A stretch of DNA of 64,000 bases from positions 1 to 64,000 of IMG/VR virus record IMGVR_UViG_3300035156_000206. One strand, 5' to 3'. The notes under the pieces are model-generated. The model was not told where the DNA came from. It worked only from the letters and a program-made list of their open reading frames with translations, and made no database searches. The stretch's first letter is position 1. Each line of letters begins with the position of its first letter. Below, one piece after another: positions 1 through 63,862 of this stretch. A program made the position numbers and the translations under genes.

Positions 1-6
1 CCAGGG

Positions 7-172
7 GGGTCGGGGCCCGGGGGGGTCGGGCGGTAGTTATTATGGGGCGGGTCGGGGTCGGGGGATGTACCGGAAGTTGGTGGTCGGGAAGGGGGGTCGG
101 GTCGGGGCCTTGTTGACCGGGGTCGGGTCGGGGGCTGGAGTTCCAATGACCAGTCGGGGTCGGGGGGGTCGG
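7..172 (+). repeat. Cluster of about 10 GGGTCGG heptamers, G-quadruplex-capable
   Basis: GGGTCGG at about 7, 23, 49, 55, 94, 99, 120, 125, 157, 166. Confidence 0.9.
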
Positions 173-426
173 ACAGTGAAGCTATTCATCCCACAGACGG
201 CTAACATGAACCTCAACTCGCCGAGTGTGATCTCATTGCCACCATCGGGCTCGGCATCGTACAGGAAGCGATAGACCTCTTCCTTATCTTCTTGTGTGGC
301 TTTGAAGTCTGTGAAGACATAGAGGATGTCTTCAAGAGCATGGTTAGGAAGTTGGTAAAGCTTCATGCTGTTGGAAAGAAGCTCACCAATCTTCTGGGAC
401 ATCAACGCAATGCGATGAGTGGTCAT
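40..426 (-). CDS. Hypothetical protein with Pro-rich C-terminus encoded by the GGGTCGG repeats
   Basis: 128-aa ORF; GGAG RBS; TTGACT-17-TATAAT promoter at 454-482. Confidence 0.65.
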   Translation of the reverse strand: MTTHRIALMSQKIGELLSNSMKLYQLPNHALEDILYVFTDFKATQEDKEEVYRFLYDAEPDGGNEITLGELRFMLAVCGMNSFTVRPPRPRLVIGTPAPDPTPVNKAPTRPPFPTTNFRYIPRPRPAP

Positions 427-2476: not shown

Positions 2477-2553
2477 TGGTAGGCCGTACTGGACTCGAAC
2501 CAGTGACCAATCCATTATGAGTGAACTGCTCTAACCAACTGAGCTAACGGCCC
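2477..2553 (-). tRNA. tRNA anticodon CAT, Ile2-like (or Met)
   Basis: GGGCCGT/ACGGCCT acceptor, CT-CAT-AA loop, GGTTCGAGTCC T-arm, CCA; body resembles bacterial Ile2. Confidence 0.85.
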
Positions 2554-2563
2554 CACATACAAC

Positions 2564-2585
2564 AAAGGACCCGAAGGTCCTTTTT
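2564..2585 (-). terminator. Terminator hairpin, same as 1392
   Basis: AAAGGACC-CGAA-GGTCCTTTTT. Confidence 0.8.
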
Positions 2586-2586
2586 A

Positions 2587-2841
2587 TTACGCAGTACGCT
2601 TCTGTGCGTACTTACTGCCTTTGTTGCCCTTGCCTTCAGGCGCTTTCGACTTCGGACGCTGGGCATCGCGTTCTGCTGCCAGCGTTTCGGCTTCACGCTT
2701 GATACGCTCCAGGGCACGAACGGTCTTCACCTTGCCGTGGATCGCCTTGGTCTGAGCCGGGCCTTTTTGACCTGCCAGGTGTAGGGCCGTGAACTGCTTG
2801 GCGATGATCTTCTTCTGTACTGCTTTGTTCTGACGAGTCAT
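2587..2841 (-). CDS. Small basic hypothetical protein
   Basis: 84-aa Lys-rich ORF inside tRNA cluster. Confidence 0.75.
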   Translation of the reverse strand: MTRQNKAVQKKIIAKQFTALHLAGQKGPAQTKAIHGKVKTVRALERIKREAETLAAERDAQRPKSKAPEGKGNKGSKYAQKRTA

Positions 2842-2877
2842 GTATCTCTTTCTGACGAGTGGAACTACTAAGGAAAC

Positions 2878-2952
2878 TGGATGCGGGAGGACGAATCGAA
2901 CGTCCGGGGCTTGGCTTATGAGACCTAGTTTGCCACCAACGACATTCCCGCA
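2878..2952 (-). tRNA. tRNA-Met/fMet-like (CAT), atypical
   Basis: TGCGGGA/TCCCGCA acceptor, CT-CAT-AA, TTCGATT T-loop, CCA; mismatch in anticodon stem and weak D-stem. Confidence 0.7.
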
Positions 2953-2960
2953 CTGAAACT

Positions 2961-3036
2961 TGGTGCCCTCAGCAGGATTCGAACCCGCGACCCCCTGATT
3001 ACAAATCAGGTGCTCTACCAGCTGAGCTATAAGGGC
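2961..3036 (-). tRNA. tRNA-Thr (TGT)
   Basis: canonical cloverleaf, TT-TGT-AA loop, CCA. Confidence 0.95.
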
Positions 3037-3052
3037 GAAACTTGTATTACTT

Positions 3053-3129
3053 TGGTGCCACGAGAGGGACTCGAACCCCCAACCTCCGGCTTCGTAGGCC
3101 AGCGCTCTATCCAGTTGAGCTATCGAGGC
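3053..3129 (-). tRNA. tRNA-Arg (ACG)
   Basis: canonical cloverleaf, CT-ACG-AA loop, CCA. Confidence 0.95.
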
Positions 3130-3146
3130 AGACTGCTATTTAGTGC

Positions 3147-3269
3147 TTACCACAACTTAGCAACAAAATGGGTCACAATCCATATCACAGCAATTGCACC
3201 AACAATGGCAGTACCACCCGCAATCACAATCACCATCTCAATTGCAGTAAAGCCGTTTTGCTGATTCAT
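3147..3269 (-). CDS. 40-aa type IV prepilin-like peptide
   Basis: Hand-translated MNQQNG|FTAIEMVIVIAGGTAIVGAIAVIWIVTHFVAKLW; class III signal motif; own promoter at 3302-3330. Confidence 0.75.
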   Translation of the reverse strand: MNQQNGFTAIEMVIVIAGGTAIVGAIAVIWIVTHFVAKLW

Positions 3270-3301
3270 CTTGCTCTCGCTGTTTGTTAACCGATGAAGA
3301 C

Positions 3302-3330
3302 AGTATACGGTGGCTTCATCAGTTAGTCAA
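3302..3330 (-). promoter_or_regulatory. sigma70-type promoter for prepilin-like ORF and tRNA cluster
   Basis: TTGACT-17-TATACT inside an inverted repeat. Confidence 0.75.
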
Positions 3331-3339
3331 CAGTTTTCT

Positions 3340-3609
3340 CTACAGCTTCACCCACTCATTGTAGATCTCTTCTGCCTCTGCCTTGATGGAGGCATCAATG
3401 TCCTCGTCCGTCATATCTGCAGTTCGGTCATCGTCCCAGATGGAGTACAGCTCAGTAGCAATAGTGTTCAAAGCTGTCAGCTTCGCATCCGGATCTTTGA
3501 TGTTGATGGCCAGCTCAGGCATATCACGAAGAGTATCTTCTTCACAGCTCTGGTTGTGAACTGCACCAATCAGTGCAGACTTGAACACGCGGAATGTACT
3601 GTTTGCCAT
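3340..3609 (-). CDS. Hypothetical protein
   Basis: start moved to MANSTF after GAGGAG RBS and repeat promoter. Confidence 0.8.
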   Translation of the reverse strand: MANSTFRVFKSALIGAVHNQSCEEDTLRDMPELAINIKDPDAKLTALNTIATELYSIWDDDRTADMTDEDIDASIKAEAEEIYNEWVKL

Positions 3610-3620
3610 TTCATTCTCCT

Positions 3621-3666
3621 CATCAGTTAATACATTCATTATACTGACTTTTGGAAAAATGTCAAC
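3621..3666 (-). promoter_or_regulatory. Early promoter+leader repeat (variant)
   Basis: TTGACA-17-TATAAT...AACTGATGAGGAG. Confidence 0.85.
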
Positions 3667-4397
3667 TAGGCTTTACGCATCACAAACAGAGTCATCGTCT
3701 TGTCTGGAATCTGTTGCAGTTTGTCCTGCTTCAGTTTCCATTGCTCCATGCCGGCAGGCGTCAGGCCCGAAGGTGCTGTACGAGGCAGGGGACGTGCAGA
3801 CCACAACTTGTCATCTGGCAGGTTGCTACCGTTGTAGACGAACGGTTTGCCATTTGCGTCTGGCATTGGGACACCATCAACAATCACATTGATGACATAG
3901 CCACGTGCACCAGCGGCGAGCTTCTTCCACAACTCAGCACCACCTTGGTATTGGGTGTTGTCGCTGATGATCGTCAAGCCCATCTCAACGAGGGCAACGT
4001 ACAGCATCGCACCGTAGCCACCACGAGCCATCTTCGGATCATTTGCAACGACGAGGTCGACCTGCACCGCACCTGGCAATTTAAGGCCCGGATTGCTGTT
4101 GCTGATCATCTGCTCTTTAAAGTCCAGCGTCACGTAGACGGCTGCACCAGCGACATTGTCTGCAGGACGAGTACCGCGCTTACCAATGAATGCTCCGCTG
4201 TGGTCTTGGCGAATGTAGACGACGTAGTTCGGGTCGTCCTTCACCAGCTTGAATTCATCGGCCAAGGTCCGATCGCTAAAGAAGTGATCGAAGCTGCTGG
4301 TATCCATTTGGAGCTTTTTTGGTTTGCCATCGGCATCTTCAGGGGCGTATGGCATCTCTTTGAGCAGGTTCTCGTTAAGTATTTGGTCTAATCGCAT
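3666..4397 (-). CDS. Late protein with GNAT-like motif A and N-terminal ILNE, possible internal head protein
   Basis: 243 aa; MRLDQILNE; ARGGYGAMLY; TAAATA at 4420-4425. Confidence 0.7.
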   Translation of the reverse strand: MRLDQILNENLLKEMPYAPEDADGKPKKLQMDTSSFDHFFSDRTLADEFKLVKDDPNYVVYIRQDHSGAFIGKRGTRPADNVAGAAVYVTLDFKEQMISNSNPGLKLPGAVQVDLVVANDPKMARGGYGAMLYVALVEMGLTIISDNTQYQGGAELWKKLAAGARGYVINVIVDGVPMPDANGKPFVYNGSNLPDDKLWSARPLPRTAPSGLTPAGMEQWKLKQDKLQQIPDKTMTLFVMRKA

Positions 4398-4418
4398 TTG
4401 GGTTCCTTTGTTATGGGC

Positions 4419-4718
4419 TTATTTAGCCTCGAACTGAGACAAGAACTCCAGGCAGTCCTTCAAGCCATCACGGCCGACGAACACAATATGATCTTGATCT
4501 TCGGGGCCATAGACAACGAGGATGTTGCATTCGTCCATGTCGAGGCTCTGGCGACCATTACGATCCCCGTACACCCAGTGGCGACCATAGGCACCTGCTT
4601 TGGTGTTGATGAGCTCTTTGATCTCGTCATCATCGTATACCTTGTCCTGCGAGCCATGCGTGACGGCACCGAACACTTTAACCTCAGACAATGGAGGTGG
4701 GCTGTAGATGGTAATCAT
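4419..4718 (-). CDS. Hypothetical protein
   Basis: start moved to MITIYS after repeat leader. Confidence 0.75.
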   Translation of the reverse strand: MITIYSPPPLSEVKVFGAVTHGSQDKVYDDDEIKELINTKAGAYGRHWVYGDRNGRQSLDMDECNILVVYGPEDQDHIVFVGRDGLKDCLEFLSQFEAK

Positions 4719-4727
4719 TGAATGCCT

Positions 4728-4776
4728 TTCGTCAGTTGATATTCCTATTATACTGACTTTCTTACAAAAAGTCAAC
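4728..4776 (-). promoter_or_regulatory. Conserved early promoter+leader repeat
   Basis: TTGACT-17-TATAAT...AACTGACGAAAGG. Confidence 0.9.
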
Positions 4777-4793
4777 TGACGTAGGCTTAAAAG

Positions 4794-5087
4794 TTATGTC
4801 GCATCCGATGTGCGTCTTTGTGGCATTCTTGAGACCAGTTCTTCGAACCAGCCTGGGACGCGCTTGTAGTTGATGTACGCGGCAATGTGCTTGGGATAAA
4901 CTTGCTCCAGCTTTGCCAGGTCATCTGCATCAGCAATCCAGATCAACTCCCAGAGGGCGTTGTTGAATTTGTCTGCTGTGCCGTAGTGCTTGCATTTGAT
5001 TAGGGATAACTCTCCCTCGTCCAGATCGATGTCTGGCTTAGCATCCTCAGGACGCTGCTCTTCCTTAGGATCACCAATAATGTACAT
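4794..5087 (-). CDS. Hypothetical protein
   Basis: 97-aa ORF; GGAGG RBS; TTGACA-17-TATAGT promoter near 5120-5148. Confidence 0.8.
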   Translation of the reverse strand: MYIIGDPKEEQRPEDAKPDIDLDEGELSLIKCKHYGTADKFNNALWELIWIADADDLAKLEQVYPKHIAAYINYKRVPGWFEELVSRMPQRRTSDAT

Positions 5088-5166
5088 CTTGATACCTCCG
5101 TTGTGAGTGTCAGTAAGTCACTATACTGTGTTACGGAGGAAATGTCAACGATCACATCGCAAAAGG

Positions 5167-5186
5167 AAAAGGACCCGAAGGTCCTT
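5167..5186 (-). terminator. Terminator hairpin, same as 1392
   Basis: AAGGACC-CGAA-GGTCCTT with A run. Confidence 0.8.
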
Positions 5187-5191
5187 GTCTC

Positions 5192-5368
5192 TCAATCCAT
5201 TTCAGACTGAGTCAGTTTATCGATTGCTTGGTTGTAGCTTCGGCGCATCGCACGCATGAAAGCTTTGCGTCCTTTACGGCCGCTTGGTGCACAGCATGAG
5301 CAGTGCAAACCTCCACCACCGAGCTTGGCATGGCAGGTTTTGAGAAAGTGTTTCTTTTCGCGAATCAT
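5192..5368 (-). CDS. Small basic CxCC protein
   Basis: start moved to MIREKK after GGAG RBS; GGGGLHCSCC motif. Confidence 0.65.
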   Translation of the reverse strand: MIREKKHFLKTCHAKLGGGGLHCSCCAPSGRKGRKAFMRAMRRSYNQAIDKLTQSEMD

Positions 5369-5420
5369 GGTTAGGGTCTCCTTATAATAACCTAATGCAT
5401 GGTACGCTCCTTTCTTTTGT

Positions 5421-5617
5421 TGGGCAGGACTAGATGGAATCGCACCACCGACCTCTTGGTTAAATACCAAGCGCTCTACCATCACGGCCGTTGGTTGGAG
5501 CACCCAGGTAACGTTACCTCCCGGGCGAGTCTGACGTCGTTTCGTGATGTTGGACATTCACATTAACGAGGAGGCCTCCCCGTCGCAGCCGCAGTCCACA
5601 AACTGAGCTATAGTCCC
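5421..5617 (-). ncRNA. tRNA-like RNA (UUU anticodon) with 120-nt insertion in the D-loop
   Basis: GGGACTA/TAGTCCT acceptor, GCTC/GAGC D-stem, CTTGG/CCAAG anticodon stem, GGTGG/CCATC T-stem; insert 5481-5600. Confidence 0.8.
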
Positions 5618-5629
5618 ATTGATCTGTAA

Positions 5630-5719
5630 TGGCGGAAACGGTGGGATTCGAACCCACGGGCCCTGTTACGGGCCGCCGGTTTAGCAAACCGGTGCCTTAA
5701 GCCTCTCAGCCACATTTCC
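5630..5719 (-). tRNA. tRNA-Ser (GCT)
   Basis: class II cloverleaf, TT-GCT-AA, long variable arm, CCA. Confidence 0.95.
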
Positions 5720-5736
5720 GAACAACTATTTATTCG

Positions 5737-5827
5737 TGGCGGAAGCGGTGGGATTCGAACCCACGGAGCCCTTTCGGACTCGGCAGTTTTCAAGACTGCT
5801 GCCTTAAACCAGCTCGGCCACGCTTCC
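5737..5827 (-). tRNA. tRNA-Ser (TGA)
   Basis: class II cloverleaf, CT-TGA-AA, CCA. Confidence 0.95.
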
Positions 5828-6115: not shown

Positions 6116-6862
6116 TTACAGACCGTGCTTGATGATCAGGCCGAACACTTCGTCCAGGGACGAGACCTCATTCACCTTGATGCTGACCTGGCGTCCGCCG
6201 GCCATCGGGAACGTCATTTCGTAGCGCGGGATGTGCGTGGCTTCGCCGATGCGATCCATGTGGTTGGGCAACTGTTGAACCGGTGCCTTTGCAACAGGAG
6301 CAGCATGCGCGCCAGAGATGGTTTCCTTGTTCTCGGCCTTGCGAGCGAGACGTTCAGCCTTCTTCGATGCCGATTCAGCTTCTTCGGCCGAGCGGTGCAT
6401 ATTCTTCTGGTACGACACTTTGCTCTTGGCCGATGTGATGGCGCGCTGATGAGTGCCGAGTTGTTCTGGCGACATGTCAGCCGTTGGAATCGCTTGCAGT
6501 GCCAGCAGGGCCGTTTGTGCTGCTTCCATCTTCGGCTTGATCTCTGCTGCGGTGGTTGTTTTGCGTGCCATGGTATTTCCTTTCGTCATTTGAGTGGAGT
6601 GTGTCCAACCCGTTGGAGGTGTGTACTCGGTCTCTGTTCCAAGTTCACTATTAATCACGATACCCAATGTATCGCGTACATGCTCCCGCGCCTTTGTCAG
6701 GTTCGGGAAAGGCTGATCGTCTACCGTCCAGCGCTTCTCCGGATGAGGCATACGTACCCCATCCGAAGTCTCCCCACGAACAATGAACTGGTCAATGTCC
6801 GGGAAGGAGCCATAGCGCTTATTGGGAAACAACCTTATTGCTGTAGTCGCACTGTTCTTCAA
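6116..6862 (-). CDS. Hypothetical protein with possible internal start MARKTT at 6571
   Basis: 248-aa ORF; promoter TTGATT-17-TATAAT near 6910-6938; internal RBS TGACGAAAGGA. Confidence 0.75.
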   Translation of the reverse strand: MKNSATTAIRLFPNKRYGSFPDIDQFIVRGETSDGVRMPHPEKRWTVDDQPFPNLTKAREHVRDTLGIVINSELGTETEYTPPTGWTHSTQMTKGNTMARKTTTAAEIKPKMEAAQTALLALQAIPTADMSPEQLGTHQRAITSAKSKVSYQKNMHRSAEEAESASKKAERLARKAENKETISGAHAAPVAKAPVQQLPNHMDRIGEATHIPRYEMTFPMAGGRQVSIKVNEVSSLDEVFGLIIKHGL

Positions 6863-6933
6863 TATATCCCCTCGTCAGCTATTTTGATCAACGCTTAGTT
6901 GATAAGGCTATTATACTGAAATTTGGAAATTAA

Positions 6934-7620
6934 TCAACTCTTTTTTGTAAGATTGTGGTAATAGGTAGACGCACCAGCTTCTGTCAATCCTGCATCACGA
7001 ACTAGCTTCTTGATGACTGTCTTGCGGCTGCGGTCTTTGTTGCGCTTGATGATCCAGATGGCTTTGTCCTTCTTGGTACCAAATGCAATCTTCTCAGGCA
7101 TAGAGGTAGGAACATGGACTGGCTCCGAAGGAACGAGTCTGGTTTTGCAAGCAACACATTGGTACTTGTCCAACATGATCTTGCGGCGCATGATGCTGGC
7201 GTAGACGTGACTATCGTCGTTGCAAGCACAAAGGAACTTGTAGGTGGTGAACTGACGTTTGCTGATGTTCGTATCCAACCCATGACACCGATCAGGCTTC
7301 AGCCCCATCAGGATCATAATTGCCTTCCATTCCTTACCATGCGCTTGGGTATCATGTCCGTGAATGTGCTCTGTGATGACGTGAGCAACCTCATGAGGTA
7401 CAATTTGGTATAGGAACGCAGAAGGGTACGCACTCAGCAATATGGGATCGAAATTGACATGGTAGTGGATACCACGAGCCCAGCCAGCAGTCGTGTAGCT
7501 ACGCTGGTAGGTGATGATAAGAGGAGGAAGGTTTAAATCAGGATACACTGCCTCCACGCGTGCGATTGAGTCGAGGACGACAGCACGAACTTGGTTGTGG
7601 AGGTCAGGAGGGATGTTCAT
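6934..7620 (-). CDS. SprT-like zinc metalloprotease with Cys cluster and C-terminal repeat-family domain
   Basis: HEVAH (HExxH), HGKEWK, CxC...CxxC; C-terminal GLTEAGASTYYHN. Confidence 0.85.
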   Translation of the reverse strand: MNIPPDLHNQVRAVVLDSIARVEAVYPDLNLPPLIITYQRSYTTAGWARGIHYHVNFDPILLSAYPSAFLYQIVPHEVAHVITEHIHGHDTQAHGKEWKAIMILMGLKPDRCHGLDTNISKRQFTTYKFLCACNDDSHVYASIMRRKIMLDKYQCVACKTRLVPSEPVHVPTSMPEKIAFGTKKDKAIWIIKRNKDRSRKTVIKKLVRDAGLTEAGASTYYHNLTKKS

Positions 7621-7644
7621 GTCCCTATTTATGGGCAACTAATG

Positions 7645-7751
7645 CCATATGGGGTGAGTTGTGGGCCCGTAATTCGCGCTTCATCGCTAGCGCCGCCAAA
7701 GGCGGCAAAGCTTGGTTCGCACTTTTCTGTTTGCACAACCCACCCCATATG
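7645..7751 (-). ncRNA. Candidate ~106-nt structured RNA
   Basis: about 18-bp closing stem CATATGGGGTG-GGTTGTG/CACAACT-CACCCCATATG plus inner hairpins. Confidence 0.65.
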
Positions 7752-7758
7752 ACACTAT

Positions 7759-7898
7759 GTAGATGACTAAAGGGTGGCCACCGAAGGCGCCTGCGAGAAG
7801 GGAAGCCTGACGAAAGGAGGAGGTCTCAGCCCGCCTTGGGGGGAAGGTGGATCTCTACTTTACGCAAGCGGCCTCGGCGCCACTCTTTAATCGACTAC
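7759..7898 (-). ncRNA. 140-nt sRNA with C-rich loops, antisense to early leader/SD
   Basis: promoter 7905-7933 predicts +1 near 7898; ends pair; hairpin contains ACCUCCUCCUUUCGUCAG. Confidence 0.75.
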
Positions 7899-7904
7899 AA
7901 GATC

Positions 7905-7933
7905 ATTTTATCACATACATCGTCAAAAGTCAA
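7905..7933 (-). promoter_or_regulatory. sigma70-type promoter of the 140-nt sRNA
   Basis: TTGACT-17-TAAAAT. Confidence 0.8.
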
Positions 7934-7949
7934 CGATTAATTCTGGGAT

Positions 7950-8213
7950 GAAGATTCAACTAGAGCTACTGCTGATGCAGGACTTAGGTAGCTACTCCCA
8001 GTCGTACACCAGCCTTCGAGTCCATCTCCGCTGACTCGCGCTCGATCCGGCATCCCCTGTCAGGGCCCTTCAACTGATTGGCTGCATGAGTGGTCTCAGT
8101 GTTCACGAACTGGTGCTCTATGCGCGGCACTCAACGAGCCGCAGAACGCGCGTTCATTAGTACTAAGCCCTACAGGCTGACAGGCCTGTTCACTCACTTC
8201 TAGTTGAACCTTC
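7950..8213 (-). ncRNA. Candidate 264-nt multi-helix RNA
   Basis: 15-bp closing helix GAAGGTTCAACTAGA/TCTAGTTGAATCTTC; CCTGTCAG/CTGACAGG; several hairpins; no credible ORF. Confidence 0.7.
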
Positions 8214-8322
8214 TTTATGAGCATGTCTCTATATAATGGCATGCGCATAAAGAAGATCCCTCTTCTTCCTAGTTTCCGTTCTAGGTTATGGGGCACTCCC
8301 CATTCGGTAACTGCAAGTTATT

Positions 8323-8475
8323 TGGTACCGGGGGCAGGCCTCGAACCTGCAAAAAAGCAAACTCAACACGGCCGTGCCTTGTTCGCCCTTACAACCCATG
8401 GCCTCCCCACTCACCTAGTCTAGCTTCACTGAGCAGGTACTAACACAGGGCGTCTACCACTTTCGCCACCCCAGC
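8323..8475 (-). ncRNA. tRNA-Leu-like RNA with about 60 extra nt in the anticodon/variable region
   Basis: GCTGGGG/CCCCGGT acceptor, Leu-type D-arm GGCGAAAGTGGTAGACGC, GCAGG-TTCGAGG-CCTGC T-arm, ACCA; 153 nt. Confidence 0.75.
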
Positions 8476-8483
8476 ATAACTCT

Positions 8484-8645
8484 TTAGTCGACGAGGTCAC
8501 CCGCGTCAACAAAACTTTCACCCCAACGAACCATCAGGCCAAGCAGGAAGCCAACAACGGCACCGATAACAGGCTCTGCCCAGACATAATGTCCAACGAC
8601 GGCACCGAGAGCAGTACTCAACACCAACAGCAAAAATGTCAACAT
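8484..8645 (-). CDS. Small membrane protein, 53 aa
   Basis: hand-translated MLTFLLLVLSTALGAVVGHYVWAEPVIGAVVGFLLGLMVRWGE...; AAGGAG RBS. Confidence 0.65.
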   Translation of the reverse strand: MLTFLLLVLSTALGAVVGHYVWAEPVIGAVVGFLLGLMVRWGESFVDAGDLVD

Positions 8646-8661
8646 GCACTACTCCTTAAAA

Positions 8662-9059
8662 TGGGTCCCCCTTTCGATGACAGGGACTAGTGAACCTTTC
8701 GGCTCAGTAGCGGGGGATTATTTCAACCCTGCAAAGTTAGTTAGGCGTAAGCCGCTACTTTGAATTGTGAGTCGTTTGCATTTACATGCTTGCATCTTTT
8801 CGCCTTACGGCCGAGGATCGCTTCTCGTGTTGTCAACCTACGGTTATCTCACCACGTCGAAACCAGGTCGCCCCCATCAGCTGCACTTTCAGGTCTATGT
8901 CTGGTGTACCAGTCCTGAGAATTGATGTTATCTCATCTTCGAAAGCGCAGTTGGTGGAGGCGGCGGGAATCGAACCCGCGTCCGCAATGCCTTCACTTTG
9001 GCATCTGGATAGGTCTTACCCTACCCCACAACAATGTATCCGTTGATTTCTCAACTGAT
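8662..9059 (-). ncRNA. ssrA: Circularly permuted (two-piece) tmRNA
   Basis: acceptor piece ending GGTTCGATTCCCGCCGCCTCCACCA at 8952 is transcribed before GGGGGCGACCTGGTTTCGAC at 8875; tag ANDSQFKVAAYA at 8741-8779; outer ends approximate. Confidence 0.9.
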
Positions 9060-9065
9060 GAAGCC

Positions 9066-9094
9066 ATTATATAGACTTCTTCAGTTGAAGTCAA
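9066..9094 (-). promoter_or_regulatory. sigma70-type promoter of the tmRNA/ncRNA operon
   Basis: TTGACT-17-TATAAT inside inverted repeat. Confidence 0.8.
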
Positions 9095-21932: not shown

Positions 21933-22127
21933 TTTTACCCCTGCTACGGTTACTGTTGTACATACGGGCTATTTATTGTGGACAAAATGTCTGGATTTGT
22001 ACTATAATGAACAATGGGTTAGGTTGTCCCCACTATACTGGTTTTTCGGCAACTTTTCAACAAATCTTCTTGACTGGTTGCAGCTATGTGTTGTACGTTA
22101 ATCGTTTTGTCTCTTTTGGGGAGTATC

Positions 22128-22337
22128 ATGGGTTCTGGTTTCTTGGATGGGTTGATGCGTGACTTGTTGATAAGTTTGCTAGCGGTTGTGTTCGCGGTTG
22201 GGTTATTGAGTGCAGGCGGTATGTATCTCTACATGAGGAGTTCTATCGATACGCCAGAGGTAGCTGCTAGTAAGTTGGCTAAGGAGCGTGCTCGTGTTAT
22301 GGAGGAATGTATTAAGGCTCGTATGGTGTGTAAGTAA
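22128..22337 (+). CDS. Small membrane protein, C-x5-VC family
   Basis: TM helix then CIKARMVC. Confidence 0.7.
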   Translation: MGSGFLDGLMRDLLISLLAVVFAVGLLSAGGMYLYMRSSIDTPEVAASKLAKERARVMEECIKARMVCK

Positions 22338-22401
22338 GACTGCTTGTCAGCCATGCGGGGGATATTGTATAATAAAGAGTTGATCTCAAAGGGAAGCTGA
22401 T

Positions 22402-23370
22402 ATGAACTGGTTGTTTGTAGGTGGTATGTTTGATGATGTAGGTGGTCGTGCTTCTGGTTACTTTGGGAAGTTGTGGCAGGCTGTGGCTGCTCTTTATCCT
22501 GGTGCTAATACGTTCGTGGTCAATGGGGGCAAGTTTAGTAAGTTGGCTGACTTGGCTACTTATAAGGCGACGCATATTGTATGGATGGTTGATGTGTCCA
22601 ATGAGTATGAGAAGTTGTTGCCTTCTATTATGGAGGCTAATCCTGGTGCTGTATTGATTCAGTCCAAATCGAACATTGGTGGGAGGTATAGTAGGGAGCA
22701 GTTGTTTGCGAGAATGCGTGCTTCTGGTGCCGAGATGTTGATTGAGTTTGATCGGGGTTGTGTTGGGCATATTACGGCTGGGTTGTTGTCTGTTAGTGGG
22801 AGGTACATTGGATACTCTGGTAGTGACATTGGGAATCTGGCTGCTGATATTGGTATTGAGGTAGATCGGATTGGGAGTTTGTTGTACCCATTGCGTAGGG
22901 AGAAGAAGTTGTTGCCTGTAAAGGATCATCCTGGTGCGTTTGGTGTTGTGCGGAAGAACCATGTGCATGAGGGGGTTGATTTGTATGGGGAGGTTGGGGA
23001 AAGTGTTGATGCGATGGAGACTGGGATTGTAGTTGGTCTTTATCAGTTCACAGGGGAGGATGTTGGTAGTCCTTGGTGGAATGATACATTTTGTGTTTTG
23101 GTTGCAGGGGAAAGTGGTGTCATCAATTATGGTGAGATACATCCTTGGTCTCCTGATTGGGTTAAGGTTGGTGACACAATTGAGAGGGGTGCGCAAGTTG
23201 GTACATTGCTGAGCGTCTTGAAGAAGGACAAGGGGAAGCCGATGACTATGTTGCATATTGAGAGGTATGTGATTGGGACAAAGCGGCATATTGATTCATG
23301 GGATTTGGACAAGGTGTGGCCGGCGAAGTTGCTGGACCCGACTGTCTTGTTAAGGAGTGCCATGTTATGA
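22402..23370 (+). CDS. M23-family peptidase with unknown N-terminal domain
   Basis: HEGVD (HxxxD) and LHIE (HxE variant) motifs in the C-terminal half. Confidence 0.8.
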   Translation: MNWLFVGGMFDDVGGRASGYFGKLWQAVAALYPGANTFVVNGGKFSKLADLATYKATHIVWMVDVSNEYEKLLPSIMEANPGAVLIQSKSNIGGRYSREQLFARMRASGAEMLIEFDRGCVGHITAGLLSVSGRYIGYSGSDIGNLAADIGIEVDRIGSLLYPLRREKKLLPVKDHPGAFGVVRKNHVHEGVDLYGEVGESVDAMETGIVVGLYQFTGEDVGSPWWNDTFCVLVAGESGVINYGEIHPWSPDWVKVGDTIERGAQVGTLLSVLKKDKGKPMTMLHIERYVIGTKRHIDSWDLDKVWPAKLLDPTVLLRSAML

Positions 23371-24245
23371 AAACTGTAGCTATTATTGGGGCTCGTGGGG
23401 TTGTATCTACGATGTTGCAGGCTAAGTTGGCTGATGACCCGGAAATTGTGGTTGCTGTTGTTGAGACTTCCTTGTTCATGTTGGCTCCCAATCCAAGGAT
23501 GGCATTAGCAGGTGCAGACTTGGTGGTTGTATGTACTGAGGAGGCTTTAAGCAGGGAAGTTGTTGCCAAAATCGATCCTGATATGGCTATTTTGGACATT
23601 AGTCCTGCGTTCAGGTGCGATTCTGAATGGGTATATGGGATGTCTACGTTGATGGGGACGAATCAGCTGATAAATGGGGCGAAGCGAGTGGCGAATCCTG
23701 GTTGTATGGCGACTGCTGCCATCTTGATTCTGCAGCCATTGGTTGAGGAGGAGTTGGTTGGTACATTTGATCCTTTGTATCTGGATGCGATGATTGGTTA
23801 TTCGGCTGGTGGTCGCAAGATGATTGCGAAGTATCAGGCTGGGGTTGCGATGAAGAAGCCACCATTTGAAATCATGACTAGTCTGGTTGAAGCGCACCCC
23901 CATGTTGGTGAGATCAAGCATGTTACTGGGTTGAGGGGTGATGTGGTATTGGCTCCGAAGATTGGTACCTACTTTAGTGGTATTCGGATGTCGATTATGG
24001 TACCAAGGACGTATGCTCCGTTCTTGTTGGGGATGTACAATTTCGCTTATGCTGGTACCGACATTGTGGTTGAGAACGACAACCCGAAGAAGATATGTGC
24101 TGATGAGATGGAGGGGAAGCCTGGAGCGATCATTCGGGTTTATCAGCATGGGGAATCGTGCCTTGTTGTGTGTACCATGGACAATTTGTTTAAGGGTGCA
24201 GTTGACACAGCCTATGAGAACATTGGGTTGATGTTAGGGATGTAA
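23367..24245 (+). CDS. argC: N-acetyl-gamma-glutamyl-phosphate reductase-like (ArgC/ASADH family)
   Basis: VAIIGARG Rossmann start, RVANPGC catalytic Cys, GYSAGG, HPHVGEI, DNLFKGA. Confidence 0.8.
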   Translation: MKTVAIIGARGVVSTMLQAKLADDPEIVVAVVETSLFMLAPNPRMALAGADLVVVCTEEALSREVVAKIDPDMAILDISPAFRCDSEWVYGMSTLMGTNQLINGAKRVANPGCMATAAILILQPLVEEELVGTFDPLYLDAMIGYSAGGRKMIAKYQAGVAMKKPPFEIMTSLVEAHPHVGEIKHVTGLRGDVVLAPKIGTYFSGIRMSIMVPRTYAPFLLGMYNFAYAGTDIVVENDNPKKICADEMEGKPGAIIRVYQHGESCLVVCTMDNLFKGAVDTAYENIGLMLGM

Positions 24246-24324: not shown

Positions 24325-25428
24325 ATGCCAGGAATTCAATACCATATCAAATACACGGACCCGTCGATTCCAGGAAAGACGCCGTTCGTTATTGAACCAA
24401 ATACAACAAATGGGCCATTGAGCCCAATCACAGCCGTGCCTGACCTGAATGCAACGTCATACAACACGTCTGTTACTTTGCCAGGCATGGGGCTGATCCA
24501 ATATGGTGAGCGTGTTGATGAAGCAATCGTTCACATCCTTGAGAATTTTGCTAGTGCTGGTGTTCCACCTGTTGCCCCAACTGTTGGGCAATTGTGGTTC
24601 GACTATTCTGTTCGTCTTCTGAAGGTGTATTCGCACAACGGGACAACTGGTGTGTGGAACTTCGTAGGTGACAATGGTACTGGTGGTGCTGTTACGGCAG
24701 CCATTGCAGCCAAAGTTGCTCGTGCAGGTGACACCATGACTGGTTTCTTGACACTCAATGCTGATCCAACATCACCACTCCATGCTGCCACAAAGCAGTA
24801 TATCGACAACAAGGCTATGACTCCTGGTCCAGCCGGTCCTCAAGGGCCAGCAGGATTGAATAGTACTGTTCCTGGTCCTCAAGGTCCAGCTGGTGCTAAT
24901 GGGGCGAACGGCGCTAATGGGGCAACTGGTGCAACCGGACCTCAAGGGCCACAGGGACCTCAAGGACCACAAGGCCCGCAGGGACCTCAAGGTGTTACGG
25001 GAGCAACTGGTGCGACTGGTGCAGCATCATTTGTTCCTGGCCCACAAGGTCCTCAGGGAGCAACTGGTGCGACGGGTGCAACCGGAGCAGCTGGTCCTGT
25101 TCCAACTTTGGTTGCTAGTGGATCGATTGCCACCAACTTCAGCTCAACAGCTGCGGCTCGTATTCTGATTGATACCGGCGTCGACATGGGTGGTGCGTGG
25201 AACGATGCATCAACGGAAGTTTGGCATGCAAATGCTACCATCTCTGGTGGTTTTTCGAGTGGTGGTGGTTGCTACGGAGTTGGGCTAGCAAGAATAGGTC
25301 ACTTGGATGGTCTTGGTGCAGGGTATGCGGATGGTCGCATCTACATCGTATTCGAGTGGGCACGATCGGGTGGTAGTGGATCGTTAACAGCAACATCAGT
25401 TTCATGGAAATTAACAAAGGTATCATAA
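24325..25428 (+). CDS. Collagen-like tail fibre/baseplate-associated protein
   Basis: YGE...HILENFA...GQLWFD N-terminus; HAATKQYID; long Gly-X-Y run. Confidence 0.85.
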
Positions 25429-59957: not shown

Positions 59958-60175
59958 GTTCTGCCAGGGAGAGGCGTTGAACCCTCTCCTTTCCTTGCAC
60001 AAAAGATTCACCTAAATATTTTCATCGAAAGTAGTTGACTGGTTTGCTGAAGTTGTTGAATATGGACAACATTGATGCAAACGACCGGGGATTCCGGTGC
60101 ACAGTAAACACTTCACCCAGTTTTGTAGTACCGTCCAGGATAGACCTGAACGTTTTTATTATAGAGGATTTCTAT

Positions 60176-61387
60176 ATGTCACATGCAACAACTCCCGCCC
60201 TCAAGAAATACGATGTCATCTTTTTCATTTGCCGTGCCCAGCCATTTACAAATGGCCACAAGCACAACATTGATCAAGCGCTTGAACAAGCCAATCGTGT
60301 TGTAGTTGTCCTGGGTTCAGCCCACCGGGCGCGCGATGTCCGCAACCCATTCACATACGAAGAGCGCAAGGCAATGATTCGCGATGTGTATCGTGCTGAA
60401 GGCATCGACCACCGCATTTCGTTCCGCCCGCAACGCGACTATCCATACAGTGATACAATGTGGGCATCGTATATACAGAAGACTGTTAGCGACTACTGCT
60501 CGACTTACCATATGGGCCGAACGGACGTCAAGGTCGGCCTAATCGGCCACATGAAGGAAGACACTTACTACCTGAATCTGTTCCCGCAGTGGGACTTTGT
60601 TCCAGTGCAAGGCATGGGTGACACATCGGATATGAATGCGACGAATGTTCGCAAGGCGTACTTCGAAGAATCTACGTTCCATGGCCGCGAAGGTGCCGAG
60701 TATAGCCTGCTCGACTATATCGAGCAAGTGACCAATCGTGTTCCTGCCCTTGTCAGCTATTTTTTATATGAATTCAAGTACGGCGTGAAGCCAGGTAACA
60801 TCAGCTACGCAGAGCTGACCAAACCACGCACAGACGGACCAACTCCTGTGTGGCCTGCGCCTGAGACACTGACGGATCAGTATCGCAACCTCAAAAATGA
60901 GCACTTCCACATCAAGAAGTACCGTGCAGCATGGGATGCAGCGCCATATGCACCGATGTTTGTTACGTGCGATTGCCTGATCGTGCAAAGTGGTCACGTA
61001 CTGCTGATCCAGCGCAAAGCGGCACCAGGCAAAGGTCTCTGGGCAATCCCAGGTGGCTTCCTAAACCAAGGCGAACGGATCGTTGATGGTATCTTCCGTG
61101 AGCTGAAGGAAGAAACAGTCATCAAGGTACCAATGAAGGTACTTCGTGGTAGCCTGGTTGGCCAACATGTTTACGACCACCCTCAGCGTTCACAGCGCGG
61201 CCGTGTGATTACGCATGCAGGCGTTGTGCACCTCGAAGACGGTCCACTGCCGAAGGTAAAGGGTTCAGACGATGCTGCCAAGGCAAAGTGGTTCCCAATC
61301 AACGAAGTGTACAAGATGCAAGACCAATTCTTCGAAGACCACTTCTTCATCATTGAAGACCTTCTGAACCGTTTCCCAAAGAAGTAA
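60176..61387 (+). CDS. nadM: Bifunctional NMN adenylyltransferase / ADP-ribose Nudix hydrolase
   Basis: RAQPFTNGH, GSA...RNPF...ER; Nudix box GGFLNQGE...RELKEET. Confidence 0.92.
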   Translation: MSHATTPALKKYDVIFFICRAQPFTNGHKHNIDQALEQANRVVVVLGSAHRARDVRNPFTYEERKAMIRDVYRAEGIDHRISFRPQRDYPYSDTMWASYIQKTVSDYCSTYHMGRTDVKVGLIGHMKEDTYYLNLFPQWDFVPVQGMGDTSDMNATNVRKAYFEESTFHGREGAEYSLLDYIEQVTNRVPALVSYFLYEFKYGVKPGNISYAELTKPRTDGPTPVWPAPETLTDQYRNLKNEHFHIKKYRAAWDAAPYAPMFVTCDCLIVQSGHVLLIQRKAAPGKGLWAIPGGFLNQGERIVDGIFRELKEETVIKVPMKVLRGSLVGQHVYDHPQRSQRGRVITHAGVVHLEDGPLPKVKGSDDAAKAKWFPINEVYKMQDQFFEDHFFIIEDLLNRFPKK

Positions 61388-62224: not shown

Positions 62225-63862
62225 ATGAACACCATCGAAACCAAAATGAACACCATTGCAGCATCAGTCCGTCACGGATTTGAATCCATTCAAGACCAAA
62301 TCCAATCACTGCGCGGTGCATTGACAAGCGACTACAACGTTGCTCTTGATACCGATAGCTACAAACCATCGCACTTCCTGCAGTACCCGCCTAACACGGA
62401 ATACGTGTTCTCGTACGTCGAAGCTCGTGGATCGAGCGACAAGCCGTCGTCGAAGATCATGAAGTCCTTGGAAAACTACCTAACGCCAGAGATGCTGAAG
62501 CTGTTCAAGGCAGAGAATACCACTCAGCCATTCAACTTCACACTGATGTTCGGTCTCCAGTACATCAACAAAATGTACCTGAGCAAGCGCGTCACCAAAG
62601 AAATGGTCGATTACGCTGCCAAGGAATGGAAAGCTCACGGCGAGCCATTCAACTACGACGGTTGGATGTACATTGTCAATGAGCTGGAAGGCAAGTTGCC
62701 AGTTCGCATTCGTGCAGCCAAAGAGGGAGCCATCATCCCTCTCAAGAACGCGCTGATCACAGTTGAGAACACCGATCCCAAATGCTTCTGGCTGACTTCG
62801 TACATTGAGCCAGCAATCCTCCGCGTATGGTATGGCATCACTGTTGGTACACTCAGTTGGACCATCAAGCAGATCATTGCTGCATACCTGCGCAAGAGCT
62901 CAGATACCATGGATGGCCTGCTATTCAAGCTGCACGACTTCGGCTCACGTGGCGTCAGCTCGTACGAAAGTGCGGGCATTGGTGGTGCTGCTCACTTGGT
63001 CAACTTCATGGGCAGTGACACAATGCGTGCCATCCAGGTGCTGAAAGAGATCTACAATGTGGGCGAGGATGAAATGCCTGCATACTCGATCCCAGCTGGT
63101 GAACACAGTTCGTTCACTTCATGGCGCAAGGAATTCGAGAAAGAAGCTTACCGCAACATGATCGTCCAGTTTGGTAAGCCAGGCGCCTTGTTTGCTGCAG
63201 TGTCTGACTCGTACGACATCTTCAATGCAGTCGACAATATCTGGGGCAAAGAGCTGAAAGACGAACTGATTGCATCCGGTGCCACCGCAGTCATTCGCCC
63301 TGACAGTGGCGAACCAAAGGACATCGTCCTCAAAGTTGTGCAACTGCTGGACAAGAACTTCGGTTCGACCATCAACAGCAAGGGATACAAAGTGTTGCAC
63401 CCTTCAGTGCGTGTCATCCAAGGGGATGGCATTAACCTGGATAGCGTTAGCGAAATCTACGACACGCTGCTGGCTGCTGGCTATAGTGCAGACAACGTCG
63501 CCCTGGGAATGGGTGGTGGACTGCTGCAAATGGTCAATCGTGACACATTGCAGTTCGCAATGAAGTGCTCGGCTGCAAAGGTTGCTGGCGAATGGGTTGA
63601 CGTATACAAAGACCCAATCACCGACAGTGGCAAGCGCAGCAAGCGTGGCCGTGTTGGTCTGTTCCAGAACACGGTAACCAGCGAATATGCCACCATTCGC
63701 CTGGATGAAGTCACAGAGCTGAATGGAGAATTCGAGCACAAGGGCGAGATCTACATCGATGCGATGGACACCGTATTTGAGAATGGTGAAGTGCTTGTCG
63801 ATGAAAAGCTGGATGTCATCCGGGCACGATCGAACGATCACTACTTTATCGTCAGCCGTTAA
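62225..63862 (+). CDS. nadV: Nicotinamide phosphoribosyltransferase
   Basis: DTDSYKPSH, HDFGSRG, SDSYD, IRPDSG, VIQGDG motifs. Confidence 0.95.
   Translation: MNTIETKMNTIAASVRHGFESIQDQIQSLRGALTSDYNVALDTDSYKPSHFLQYPPNTEYVFSYVEARGSSDKPSSKIMKSLENYLTPEMLKLFKAENTTQPFNFTLMFGLQYINKMYLSKRVTKEMVDYAAKEWKAHGEPFNYDGWMYIVNELEGKLPVRIRAAKEGAIIPLKNALITVENTDPKCFWLTSYIEPAILRVWYGITVGTLSWTIKQIIAAYLRKSSDTMDGLLFKLHDFGSRGVSSYESAGIGGAAHLVNFMGSDTMRAIQVLKEIYNVGEDEMPAYSIPAGEHSSFTSWRKEFEKEAYRNMIVQFGKPGALFAAVSDSYDIFNAVDNIWGKELKDELIASGATAVIRPDSGEPKDIVLKVVQLLDKNFGSTINSKGYKVLHPSVRVIQGDGINLDSVSEIYDTLLAAGYSADNVALGMGGGLLQMVNRDTLQFAMKCSAAKVAGEWVDVYKDPITDSGKRSKRGRVGLFQNTVTSEYATIRLDEVTELNGEFEHKGEIYIDAMDTVFENGEVLVDEKLDVIRARSNDHYFIVSR

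What the first reader, a model, noticed from the sequence alone, without database searches (positions are those of the whole stretch)
8741..8779. tmRNA tag ends AAYA: a stop-to-Tyr change appears to mask the C-terminal AA degron
Seen: GCA AAC GAC TCA CAA TTC AAA GTA GCG GCT TAC GCC TAA = ANDSQFKVAAYA. TAC sits in the hairpin loop (GGC-UUAC-GCC) where the UAA stop usually lies, so the tag is a normal ...VAA extended by YA. Established: ClpX reads the terminal Ala-Ala-COOH. Inference: ribosomes are rescued while tagged products escape or slow ClpXP degradation.
Basis: partly seen in the sequence, partly recalled or inferred. Interest (0 to 1): 0.6.

Follow-up and report, generated by a model that had tools for sequence, protein, structure and literature searches.

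The report
Phage tmRNA with conserved AAYA tag
A 292-kb phage carries its own two-piece ribosome-rescue RNA (tmRNA) whose tag ends Ala-Ala-Tyr-Ala instead of the usual Ala-Ala; this ending is real and shared by a small clade of phage and prophage tmRNAs, so it probably changes what happens to rescued proteins, but that has not been tested.

Summary
Window 8650-9044 (minus strand) is an intact circularly permuted tmRNA gene with the tag ANDSQFKVAAYA, and UAC lies in the loop of a GGC-UUAC-GCC hairpin. The window is the start of a 292-kb viral record from a biocrust metagenome, so this is a phage tmRNA.

The base is not an error. A second assembly of the likely source run matches exactly. Five other two-piece tmRNAs from different samples carry the same 15 nt, GCG GCU UAC GCC UAA, although they are only 54-60% identical to ours overall. 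One lies in a prophage-like element of Massilia eurypsychrophila, which also has its own one-piece tmRNA (tag ANDNSYALAA), a canonical ClpX and SspB.

The six form a clade even with the tag masked. About 70 other virus-borne two-piece tmRNAs end in AA.

The "stop became Tyr" history is plausible. The betaproteobacterial model aligns its UAA to our UAC without gaps. However, the sister tmRNA has a sense codon there and the same downstream stop, so any change is old.

Weaker ClpXP recognition is a reasonable inference from published E. coli data. It is untested, and redirection to another protease or adaptor-dependent degradation remain open.

This is a new variant of a known kind, of moderate interest.

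The parts
8650..9044 (-). Circularly permuted (two-piece) tmRNA gene of the phage
   Evidence: ARAGORN tmRNA*; RF04321 108 bits; RF01850 79.8 bits at 8678-9087
9066..9094 (-). Sigma-70-like promoter TTGACT-17-TATAAT (11 of 12) just upstream of the gene
   Evidence: Consensus scan; a pattern match only, function not shown
8952..9011 (-). Acceptor piece: 3' half of the tRNA-like domain, with T-arm GGGUUCGAUUCCC and an encoded CCA end (A at 8952)
   Evidence: Rfam alignment; sequence reading. Contigs of many other organisms pile up on 8951-8985
8876..8951 (-). Intervening segment between the two pieces, presumably removed in processing
   Evidence: Unaligned insert in both Rfam alignments; its removal is inferred from known two-piece tmRNAs
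8650..8875 (-). Coding piece. It starts 5'-GGGGGCG, which pairs with ...CGCCUCC-ACCA to give G3.U70. It holds the tag frame and the downstream helices
   Evidence: Sequence reading; alignment A1 shows the acceptor stem covarying in relatives while G3.U70 is kept
8741..8779 (-). Tag reading frame GCA AAC GAC UCA CAA UUC AAA GUA GCG GCU UAC GCC UAA = ANDSQFKVAAYA*
8747..8749 (-). Tyr codon UAC, at the position of the consensus stop in both Rfam tmRNA models
8744..8753 (-). Mini-hairpin GGC-UUAC-GCC, invariant in all six AAYA tmRNAs; the sister has GGC-UGCG-GCC
8733..8761 (-). Outer helix AAAGU (8761-8757) paired with ACUUU (8737-8733), enclosing the mini-hairpin and the stop; relatives have AAGGUC/GACCUU
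   Evidence: RNAalifold and MFE fold
8484..8645 (-). Small hydrophobic ORF (53 aa) with AAGGAG before its ATG, directly downstream; possibly co-transcribed
   Evidence: ORF list and sequence; its link to the tmRNA is not tested

Best explanation
This is a functional phage-encoded two-piece tmRNA of the betaproteobacterial type. It is transcribed from its own sigma-70-like promoter, charged with alanine by the host AlaRS (G3.U70 is present), and used with host SmpB to free ribosomes stalled during infection. The phage encodes no SmpB of its own. It belongs to a small clade of mobile-element tmRNAs whose frame runs two codons past the usual stop position, so rescued proteins end ...KVAAYA-COOH rather than ...AA-COOH. 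Because ClpX reads the terminal Ala-Ala-carboxylate, a penultimate Tyr most likely weakens direct ClpXP recognition. Rescue would then be partly uncoupled from the host's main degradation route. The AAND..F start of the tag, the part that binds SspB in E. coli, is kept, so any remaining degradation may depend on the adaptor or on other proteases. Shown: the gene, its integrity, the tag, its conservation and its restriction to mobile elements. Inferred: expression, processing, use in trans-translation and the effect on proteolysis.
For: The gene is intact: and the acceptor stem covaries across relatives with G3.U70 kept. A promoter-like site lies upstream. The record has no SmpB and no Clp-type ATPase. 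The ending is conserved: six tmRNAs carry AAYA and an identical final 15 nt, despite 54-60% overall identity to ours and synonymous changes elsewhere in the tag. They stay a clade with the tag masked, support 0.84. The carrier genomes share almost no proteins, and G000 and G002 share none at E<=1e-5, so there is no shared phage-encoded reader of the tag. Mobile-element restriction: a pattern scan of one genome for each of 185,579 species found the permuted AAYA form only in a prophage-like element of Massilia. That host has its own tmRNA with tag ANDNSYALAA, a ClpX with intact GYVG, SITRDV and RKH motifs, and SspB. About 70 other virus-borne permuted tmRNAs end in AA. Literature: mutating the penultimate or last Ala raises KM for ClpXP (PMC7652416), and terminal Ala-Ala was critical in a random C-terminal tag screen (PMC10862746).
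Against: There are no expression data: no RNA run holds the locus. No biochemical data exist for a ...AYA end. ClpX tolerates penultimate Val (FKLVA is degraded like YALAA, PMC10862746), so Tyr might be tolerated too. The invariant 15 nt also forms a hairpin, so RNA-level constraint could explain the conservation without selection on the peptide. The host of this particular phage is unknown. Four of the five other members were first found with patterns that required the AAYA-type end. The tag-independent scans added no new clade members.
Confidence: 0.5

Rival explanations
1. Protease switch: AAYA is still a degradation signal, but for a different reader (Lon, ClpAP, FtsH or Tsp). This would parallel the aromatic-Ala tag ends of Mollicutes, which are read by Lon. 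Tagged proteins are destroyed by another route.
For: Mollicute tags end NYAFA and are recognised mainly by Lon (PMC9382460, PMC8403727). A 1.6-Mb uncultured bacterium has, as its only tmRNA, one with the tag ...PLAAYA. Its small-genome relatives have tags ending FA, YA, LA or VA, so aromatic-Ala ends serve as native tags elsewhere.
Against: Lon recognition of Mollicute tags co-evolved with their own Lon. Nothing shows that Lon of a betaproteobacterial host reads AAYA. The E. coli screen found no strong short C-terminal degrons independent of ClpXP (PMC10862746).
Confidence: 0.2
2. Neutral by-product: the selected feature is the RNA hairpin or simply ribosome release. The two extra residues have little effect on the fate of tagged proteins.
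For: The conserved 15 nt coincide with the mini-hairpin and its flank. Ribosome release, not tagging, is the essential tmRNA function in several bacteria (PMC8403727). LVA-type ends are still ClpX substrates (PMC10862746).
Against: Nearly all other virus-borne two-piece tmRNAs keep an AA end, which argues that the tag end is under selection in phages too. Hairpin loop bases, including the wobble C of UAC, are invariant across six diverged genes, although six sequences is a small sample.
Confidence: 0.2
3. Sequencing or assembly error, or a recent private mutation of this genome.
For: It is a single metagenome-assembled record. Only contigs, not raw reads, could be laid on it.
Against: The second assembly is identical at depth about 22. 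Five other sequences from different samples have the same codons.
Confidence: 0.01
4. Decoy or inhibitor: the phage RNA competes with host tmRNA for SmpB to damp host trans-translation rather than to tag proteins.
For: A tRNA-like-domain-only tmRNA of mycobacteriophage DS6A is reported to inhibit host tmRNA (PMC4131195, PMC11915505).
Against: Here the full reading frame, resume context, stop and downstream helices are kept and conserved, which a pure decoy would not need.
Confidence: 0.05

Closest known systems
Betaproteobacterial two-piece tmRNA (Rfam RF01850 beta_tmRNA; Sharkady and Williams 2004, as cited in PMC9004378)
   Same: Permuted gene order, tRNA-like domain, resume context UAAAU-GCA-AAC-GA, and a 10-codon AND..F..AA core that aligns codon for codon.
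   Different: The score of 79.8 bits is just under the curated 84. The consensus stop position is a Tyr codon and the frame ends two codons later. The gene is carried by phages and a prophage, not as the cell's own tmRNA.
Phage-encoded two-piece tmRNAs (Methylophilales phage Melnitz and pelagimyophages, PMC9004378; Stenotrophomonas phage Marzo; many IMG/VR contigs)
   Same: Large T4-like phages with tRNA sets carry a permuted tmRNA although they encode no SmpB. Contig L192 shares a syntenic T4-like replication block with this phage and also has a tmRNA.
   Different: Those tags end LAA, IAA, MAA, QAA or AAA. No glutamine riboswitch was found here. Only this clade ends AAYA.
Mollicute tmRNA tags ending NYAFA, read by Lon (PMC9382460, PMC8403727)
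   Same: A natural tag with an aromatic residue before the last Ala, and a departure from ClpX's Ala-Ala rule.
   Different: Those are the cell's only tmRNA, in lineages without active ClpXP, and the tags are long. Here the one identified host has canonical ClpX, SspB and its own LAA tag.
Engineered weakened ssrA tags (LVA, AAV and ASV variants, PMC9382460; YALAS and YALAD, PMC10862746)
   Same: Changing the last residues tunes ClpXP KM while rescue and tagging chemistry stay the same. The SspB-binding start of the tag is retained.
   Different: Those are laboratory constructs. This is a natural, conserved variant, and its kinetics are unknown.

Membership tests
tmRNA, permuted (two-piece) form | tRNA-like domain with T-arm, acceptor stem with G3.U70 and a CCA end | tested here: met
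   RF04321 at 108 bits against a cut-off of 47. 5'-GGGGGCG pairs with CGCCUCC-ACCA, giving G3.U70. The stem covaries in relatives with G.U kept.
tmRNA, permuted (two-piece) form | Acceptor piece encoded upstream of the coding piece, with an intervening segment | tested here: met
   ARAGORN tmRNA*; the order is seen in both Rfam alignments.
tmRNA, permuted (two-piece) form | Short tag frame starting at a conserved resume codon and ending in a stop | tested here: met
   GCA resume codon after GUAAAU, as in 24 relatives; in-frame UAA at 8743-8741.
tmRNA, permuted (two-piece) form | Tag ends in Ala-Ala-COOH (typical, but not universal) | tested here: not met
   The tag ends Ala-Ala-Tyr-Ala.
tmRNA, permuted (two-piece) form | Expressed, cut into two pieces and active with SmpB | not testable with these tools
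   No RNA run holds the locus. No SmpB in the phage record, so host SmpB would be needed.
Rfam RF01850 beta_tmRNA | Score at or above the curated gathering threshold of 84 bits | tested here: not met
   79.8 bits, E 1.8e-24, full-length match 1-331. It resembles the family but is a divergent relative.
ClpX ssrA-type degron | [quoted passage not shown] | tested here: not met
   The penultimate residue is Tyr. The requirement is taken from PMC7652416 and PMC10862746. The actual effect on binding is not measured.
Lon-read aromatic-Ala tags (Mollicute type) | Degraded by Lon through the C-terminal aromatic-Ala motif | not testable with these tools
   Only the resemblance ...YA to ...FA is seen.

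The most novel reading that the evidence does not exclude
Phages and prophages of betaproteobacteria carry a dedicated orthogonal tmRNA. It frees ribosomes in the infected or lysogenic cell but writes a tag that the host ClpX does not read directly. The mobile element thereby controls the fate of rescued proteins, by stabilising them, making their turnover depend on an adaptor, or sending them to another protease. It would also avoid clogging ClpXP during the surge of broken host mRNAs.
Probability: 0.3. Interest if true: 0.65.

Novelty: new variant of a known kind. Interest (0 to 1): 0.5.

Why it matters
tmRNA tags are the textbook example of a C-terminal Ala-Ala degron, and phage tmRNAs are known but their purpose is unclear. 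This is a conserved tag variant restricted to mobile elements, found beside a host that keeps the normal tag, ClpX and SspB. It gives a natural experiment on whether viruses want ribosome rescue, protein destruction, or rescue without destruction. It is directly testable, because one carrier, Massilia eurypsychrophila JCM 30074, is a cultured strain. If the tag proves orthogonal to ClpXP it would also be a useful natural degron variant.

Tried and rejected
- **Exact-tag scans.** Back-translation patterns of the tag found nothing in viral contigs or JGI metagenome contigs.
- **Flanking protein.** A protein-based search with the neighbouring 234-aa ORF found no related viral locus.
- **Cultured phages.** None match the tmRNA beyond the conserved T-arm, and none match the first 25 kb beyond tRNAs. 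The closest topoisomerase II is at most 36% identical, so no host can be named for this phage.
- **Tag-independent scans for clade members without AAYA.** These returned only known members or more distant phage tmRNAs with LAA ends.
- **Metagenome pattern hits.** 35 of 37 were unrelated protein-coding sequence.
- **Reads.** Only assembled contigs were available. Runs X2 and X3 hold identical fragments of the phage but do not cover the tag. Run X4 holds a diverged relative lying on 8658-8791, with no listed difference inside the tag, but its letters could not be inspected.
- **Literature.** My recollection that Coxiella burnetii has a tag ending EAYA could not be verified, so I do not rely on it. 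The tmRNA database supplement held no AAYA entry as text. PMC2570983 (Gur and Sauer 2008) is not held.
- **Not used.** No alternative genetic code, no structure prediction and no complex prediction: the element is an RNA, and a 12-residue tag is outside the complex tool's range.

Full report
**What is there.** The finding sits inside a circularly permuted (two-piece) tmRNA gene on the minus strand.
- ARAGORN calls it at 8650-9044 with the tag ANDSQFKVAAYA*.
- Rfam's tmRNA_permuted model scores 108 bits at 8747-9011.
- The betaproteobacterial two-piece model RF01850 matches full length at 8678-9087 with 79.8 bits, E 1.8e-24, just under its curated 84 bits.
The Tyr codon is 8749-8747 and the stop is 8743-8741.
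- The acceptor stem (5'-GGGGGCG with CGCCUCC-ACCA) has the G3.U70 pair that alanyl-tRNA synthetase needs. The T-arm and CCA are encoded.
- A near-consensus promoter-like site, TTGACT-17-TATAAT, lies directly upstream at 9094-9066.

The window is the first 64 kb of a 291,967-bp IMG/VR virus record (CheckV 84% complete, GC 48%).
- The record has 29 tRNA genes, T4-type topoisomerase II, ribonucleotide reductase and NAD-salvage genes.
- No cultured phage is close.
- The sequencing runs that hold it are biocrust metagenomes.
- The record has no SmpB and no Clp-type ATPase. It has one ClpP-like gene.
- So this is a phage tmRNA that must work with host SmpB, AlaRS and proteases.

**Is the base real?** Yes.
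- Logan's separate assembly of run X1 covers 6500-8979 at depth about 22 with no difference. X1 is probably the source sample and only contigs were available, so this is a second assembly, not a second experiment.
- The stronger evidence comes from relatives. Pattern scans that left the third base of the Tyr codon free or allowed either Tyr codon found five more permuted tmRNAs:

| Source | Tag |
|---|---|
| Complete 60-kb viral contig (G002/L121) | ANDAQFKVAAYA |
| 20.6-kb viral contig (G003/L122) | ANDAEFKVAAYA |
| 58.5-kb metagenome contig (L169) | ANDAEFKVAAYA |
| 1.5-kb groundwater contig (L175) | ANDAQFKVAAYA |
| Contig 28 of Massilia eurypsychrophila JCM 30074 (L124) | ANDAEFKVAAYA |

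- All six share the identical 15 nt GCG GCU UAC GCC UAA. Elsewhere in the tag they differ by synonymous changes (GAC/GAT, AAA/AAG, GUA/GUC) and by S/A and Q/E replacements.
- Ours is only 54-60% identical to the other five over the whole gene.
- In a tree of 70 virus-borne permuted tmRNAs the six form one clade with support 0.92, or 0.84 when the tag columns are removed.
- The carrier genomes share almost no proteins.

**The Massilia carrier.** In Massilia the gene lies in the first 15.6 kb of the contig.
- That stretch holds primase, helicase, ParB-like, KilA-N and Arc-like genes and is bounded by a tRNA-Pro gene. The rest of the contig is ordinary chromosome. It is therefore a prophage-like island.
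- The same genome has its own one-piece tmRNA at 211 bits, with tag ANDNSYALAA.
- It has a ClpX whose GYVG, SITRDV and GGRKH loops match those of ClpX in solved structures, and it has SspB.
- Among one genome for each of 185,579 species, this was the only permuted tmRNA with an AND...AAYA tag.
- The variant therefore looks specific to mobile elements and coexists with a normal host system.

**How unusual is it?** About 70 permuted tmRNAs on viral contigs end in LAA, MAA, QAA or AAA.
- The same holds for two more phage tmRNAs found with a tag-independent motif and for Stenotrophomonas phage Marzo.
- Phage two-piece tmRNAs as such are known: 402 of 18,146 phage genomes carry a tmRNA, and 53 of the 133 unique tmRNA structures among them are two-piece (PMC9004378). 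See also PMC4131195 and PMC11915505.
- Tags ending in an aromatic residue plus Ala are not unknown in bacteria. Mollicute tags end NYAFA and go to Lon (PMC9382460, PMC8403727).
- A 1.6-Mb uncultured bacterium has ...PLAAYA as its only tmRNA tag, and its small-genome relatives have FA, YA, LA and VA ends.

**Structure and history.**
- The single-sequence fold and the alignment fold agree on the structure. An outer helix forms between the Lys-Val codons and the bases after the stop (ours AAAGU/ACUUU, relatives AAGGUC/GACCUU). It encloses an invariant mini-hairpin GGC-UUAC-GCC, and the real stop follows the hairpin.
- In neighbouring clades the corresponding hairpin (GCAGC-CUAAAC-GCUGC) has UAA in its loop.
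- RF01850 aligns its 10-codon consensus tag to ours without a gap, with its UAA over our UAC.
- This supports the view that the Tyr codon occupies the old stop position.
- However, the sister tmRNA (L014, tag ANDSNFEMKAAA) has the same 12-codon length, the same GCC-UAA end and a GGC-UGCG-GCC hairpin with a sense Ala codon in the loop.
- The extension therefore predates the clade. Whether UAA changed directly to UAC cannot be decided.

**Function.** What is shown: an intact, conserved tmRNA gene with a conserved non-canonical tag end, carried by phages and a prophage. What is inferred: it rescues ribosomes in the infected cell and writes a tag that host ClpX reads less well.
- The basis is published E. 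coli work. The terminal Ala-Ala-carboxylate is the main ClpX determinant, and changing either Ala raises KM with little effect on Vmax (PMC7652416).
- In a random C-terminal tag screen the terminal Ala-Ala was critical, but FKLVA was degraded like YALAA (PMC10862746). A penultimate substitution therefore need not be fatal to recognition.
- The AAND..F start of the tag matches the part of the E. coli tag known to bind SspB (my knowledge of Flynn et al. 2001, not tested here). Adaptor-dependent degradation is therefore possible.
- Since G000 and G002 share no protein at E<=1e-5 and the other carriers share almost none, any reader of the tag must be host-encoded.
- Rivals: redirection to another protease such as Lon; a neutral by-product of selection on the RNA hairpin; a decoy role.
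- The near-universal AA end in other phage tmRNAs argues that phages do select on the tag end, which speaks against pure neutrality.

**Limits.**
- No RNA data and no raw reads were available.
- The host of this phage is unknown.
- Four of the five relatives were first found by patterns that required an AAYA-type end. The tag-independent scans added no new clade members.
- Run X4, an aquatic metagenome, holds a diverged relative lying over the tag with no listed difference there, but I could not read its letters.

**Verdict.** It is not an error but a fixed feature of a small clade of mobile-element tmRNAs. The evolutionary reading is plausible but the change is old. The functional reading is reasonable and untested. 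This is a new variant of a known kind, of moderate interest, and it is readily testable in a cultured Massilia strain.

Noticed in passing
G000 95355-96158 (+), outside the window; L192 12125-12679 (-): The phage encodes a ClpP-like serine protease (PHROG 1827, E 6.6e-56; Pfam CLP_protease 34 bits) whose Ser, His and Asp align to the ClpP triad. In the related contig L192, a tmRNA with an LAA tag lies directly upstream of the homologous gene.
   Followed up: partly
window 2477-5827 (-); G000 258286-271723: Six tRNA genes lie in the window and 23 more near the other end of the record. ARAGORN reports one 'tRNA-???' with an odd two-base anticodon call at G000 268847-268922.
   Followed up: no
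window 7640-8480: About 840 bases have no ORF of 70 aa or more and no Rfam match at E<=1. A promoter-like site lies at 7933-7905 (-). This might hold an undescribed RNA or small genes.
   Followed up: partly
window 60035-61387 (+) and 62225-63862 (+): An NAD salvage pair: a cytidyltransferase/nicotinamide-nucleotide adenylyltransferase-Nudix fusion and a nicotinamide phosphoribosyltransferase (PHROG 448, E 9.5e-150).
   Followed up: no
window 22000-24000: GC skew jumps to +0.40, with long overlapping ORFs on both strands (22312-23289 -, 22402-23370 +), next to a tail-fibre-like gene with collagen-like tail-protein matches at 24325-25428.
   Followed up: no
window 1-200; G000 last 120 bases: The record starts with G-rich GGGGTCGGG-type repeats and ends in a (GGCGTT)n run. 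These could be contig-end artefacts or repeat-rich genes.
   Followed up: no
window 6934-7638 (-): A 234-aa ORF with an HEVAH (HExxH-type) motif. No related locus was found in viral contigs. It was not scanned against family libraries.
   Followed up: no
L145 (Massilia eurypsychrophila contig 28) 1-15655: A prophage-like island bounded by tRNA-Pro(ggg) carries a second, permuted tmRNA beside primase, helicase, ParB-like, KilA-N and Arc-like genes. The island runs off the contig end, so its full extent and integrase were not seen.
   Followed up: partly
L195 and L198-L226 (small-genome bacteria related to G004): tmRNA tags in these 0.8-1.7 Mb genomes end in very varied ways (FA, YA, LA, VA, HA, AAA), so the Ala-Ala rule is relaxed across this whole lineage.
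   Followed up: partly
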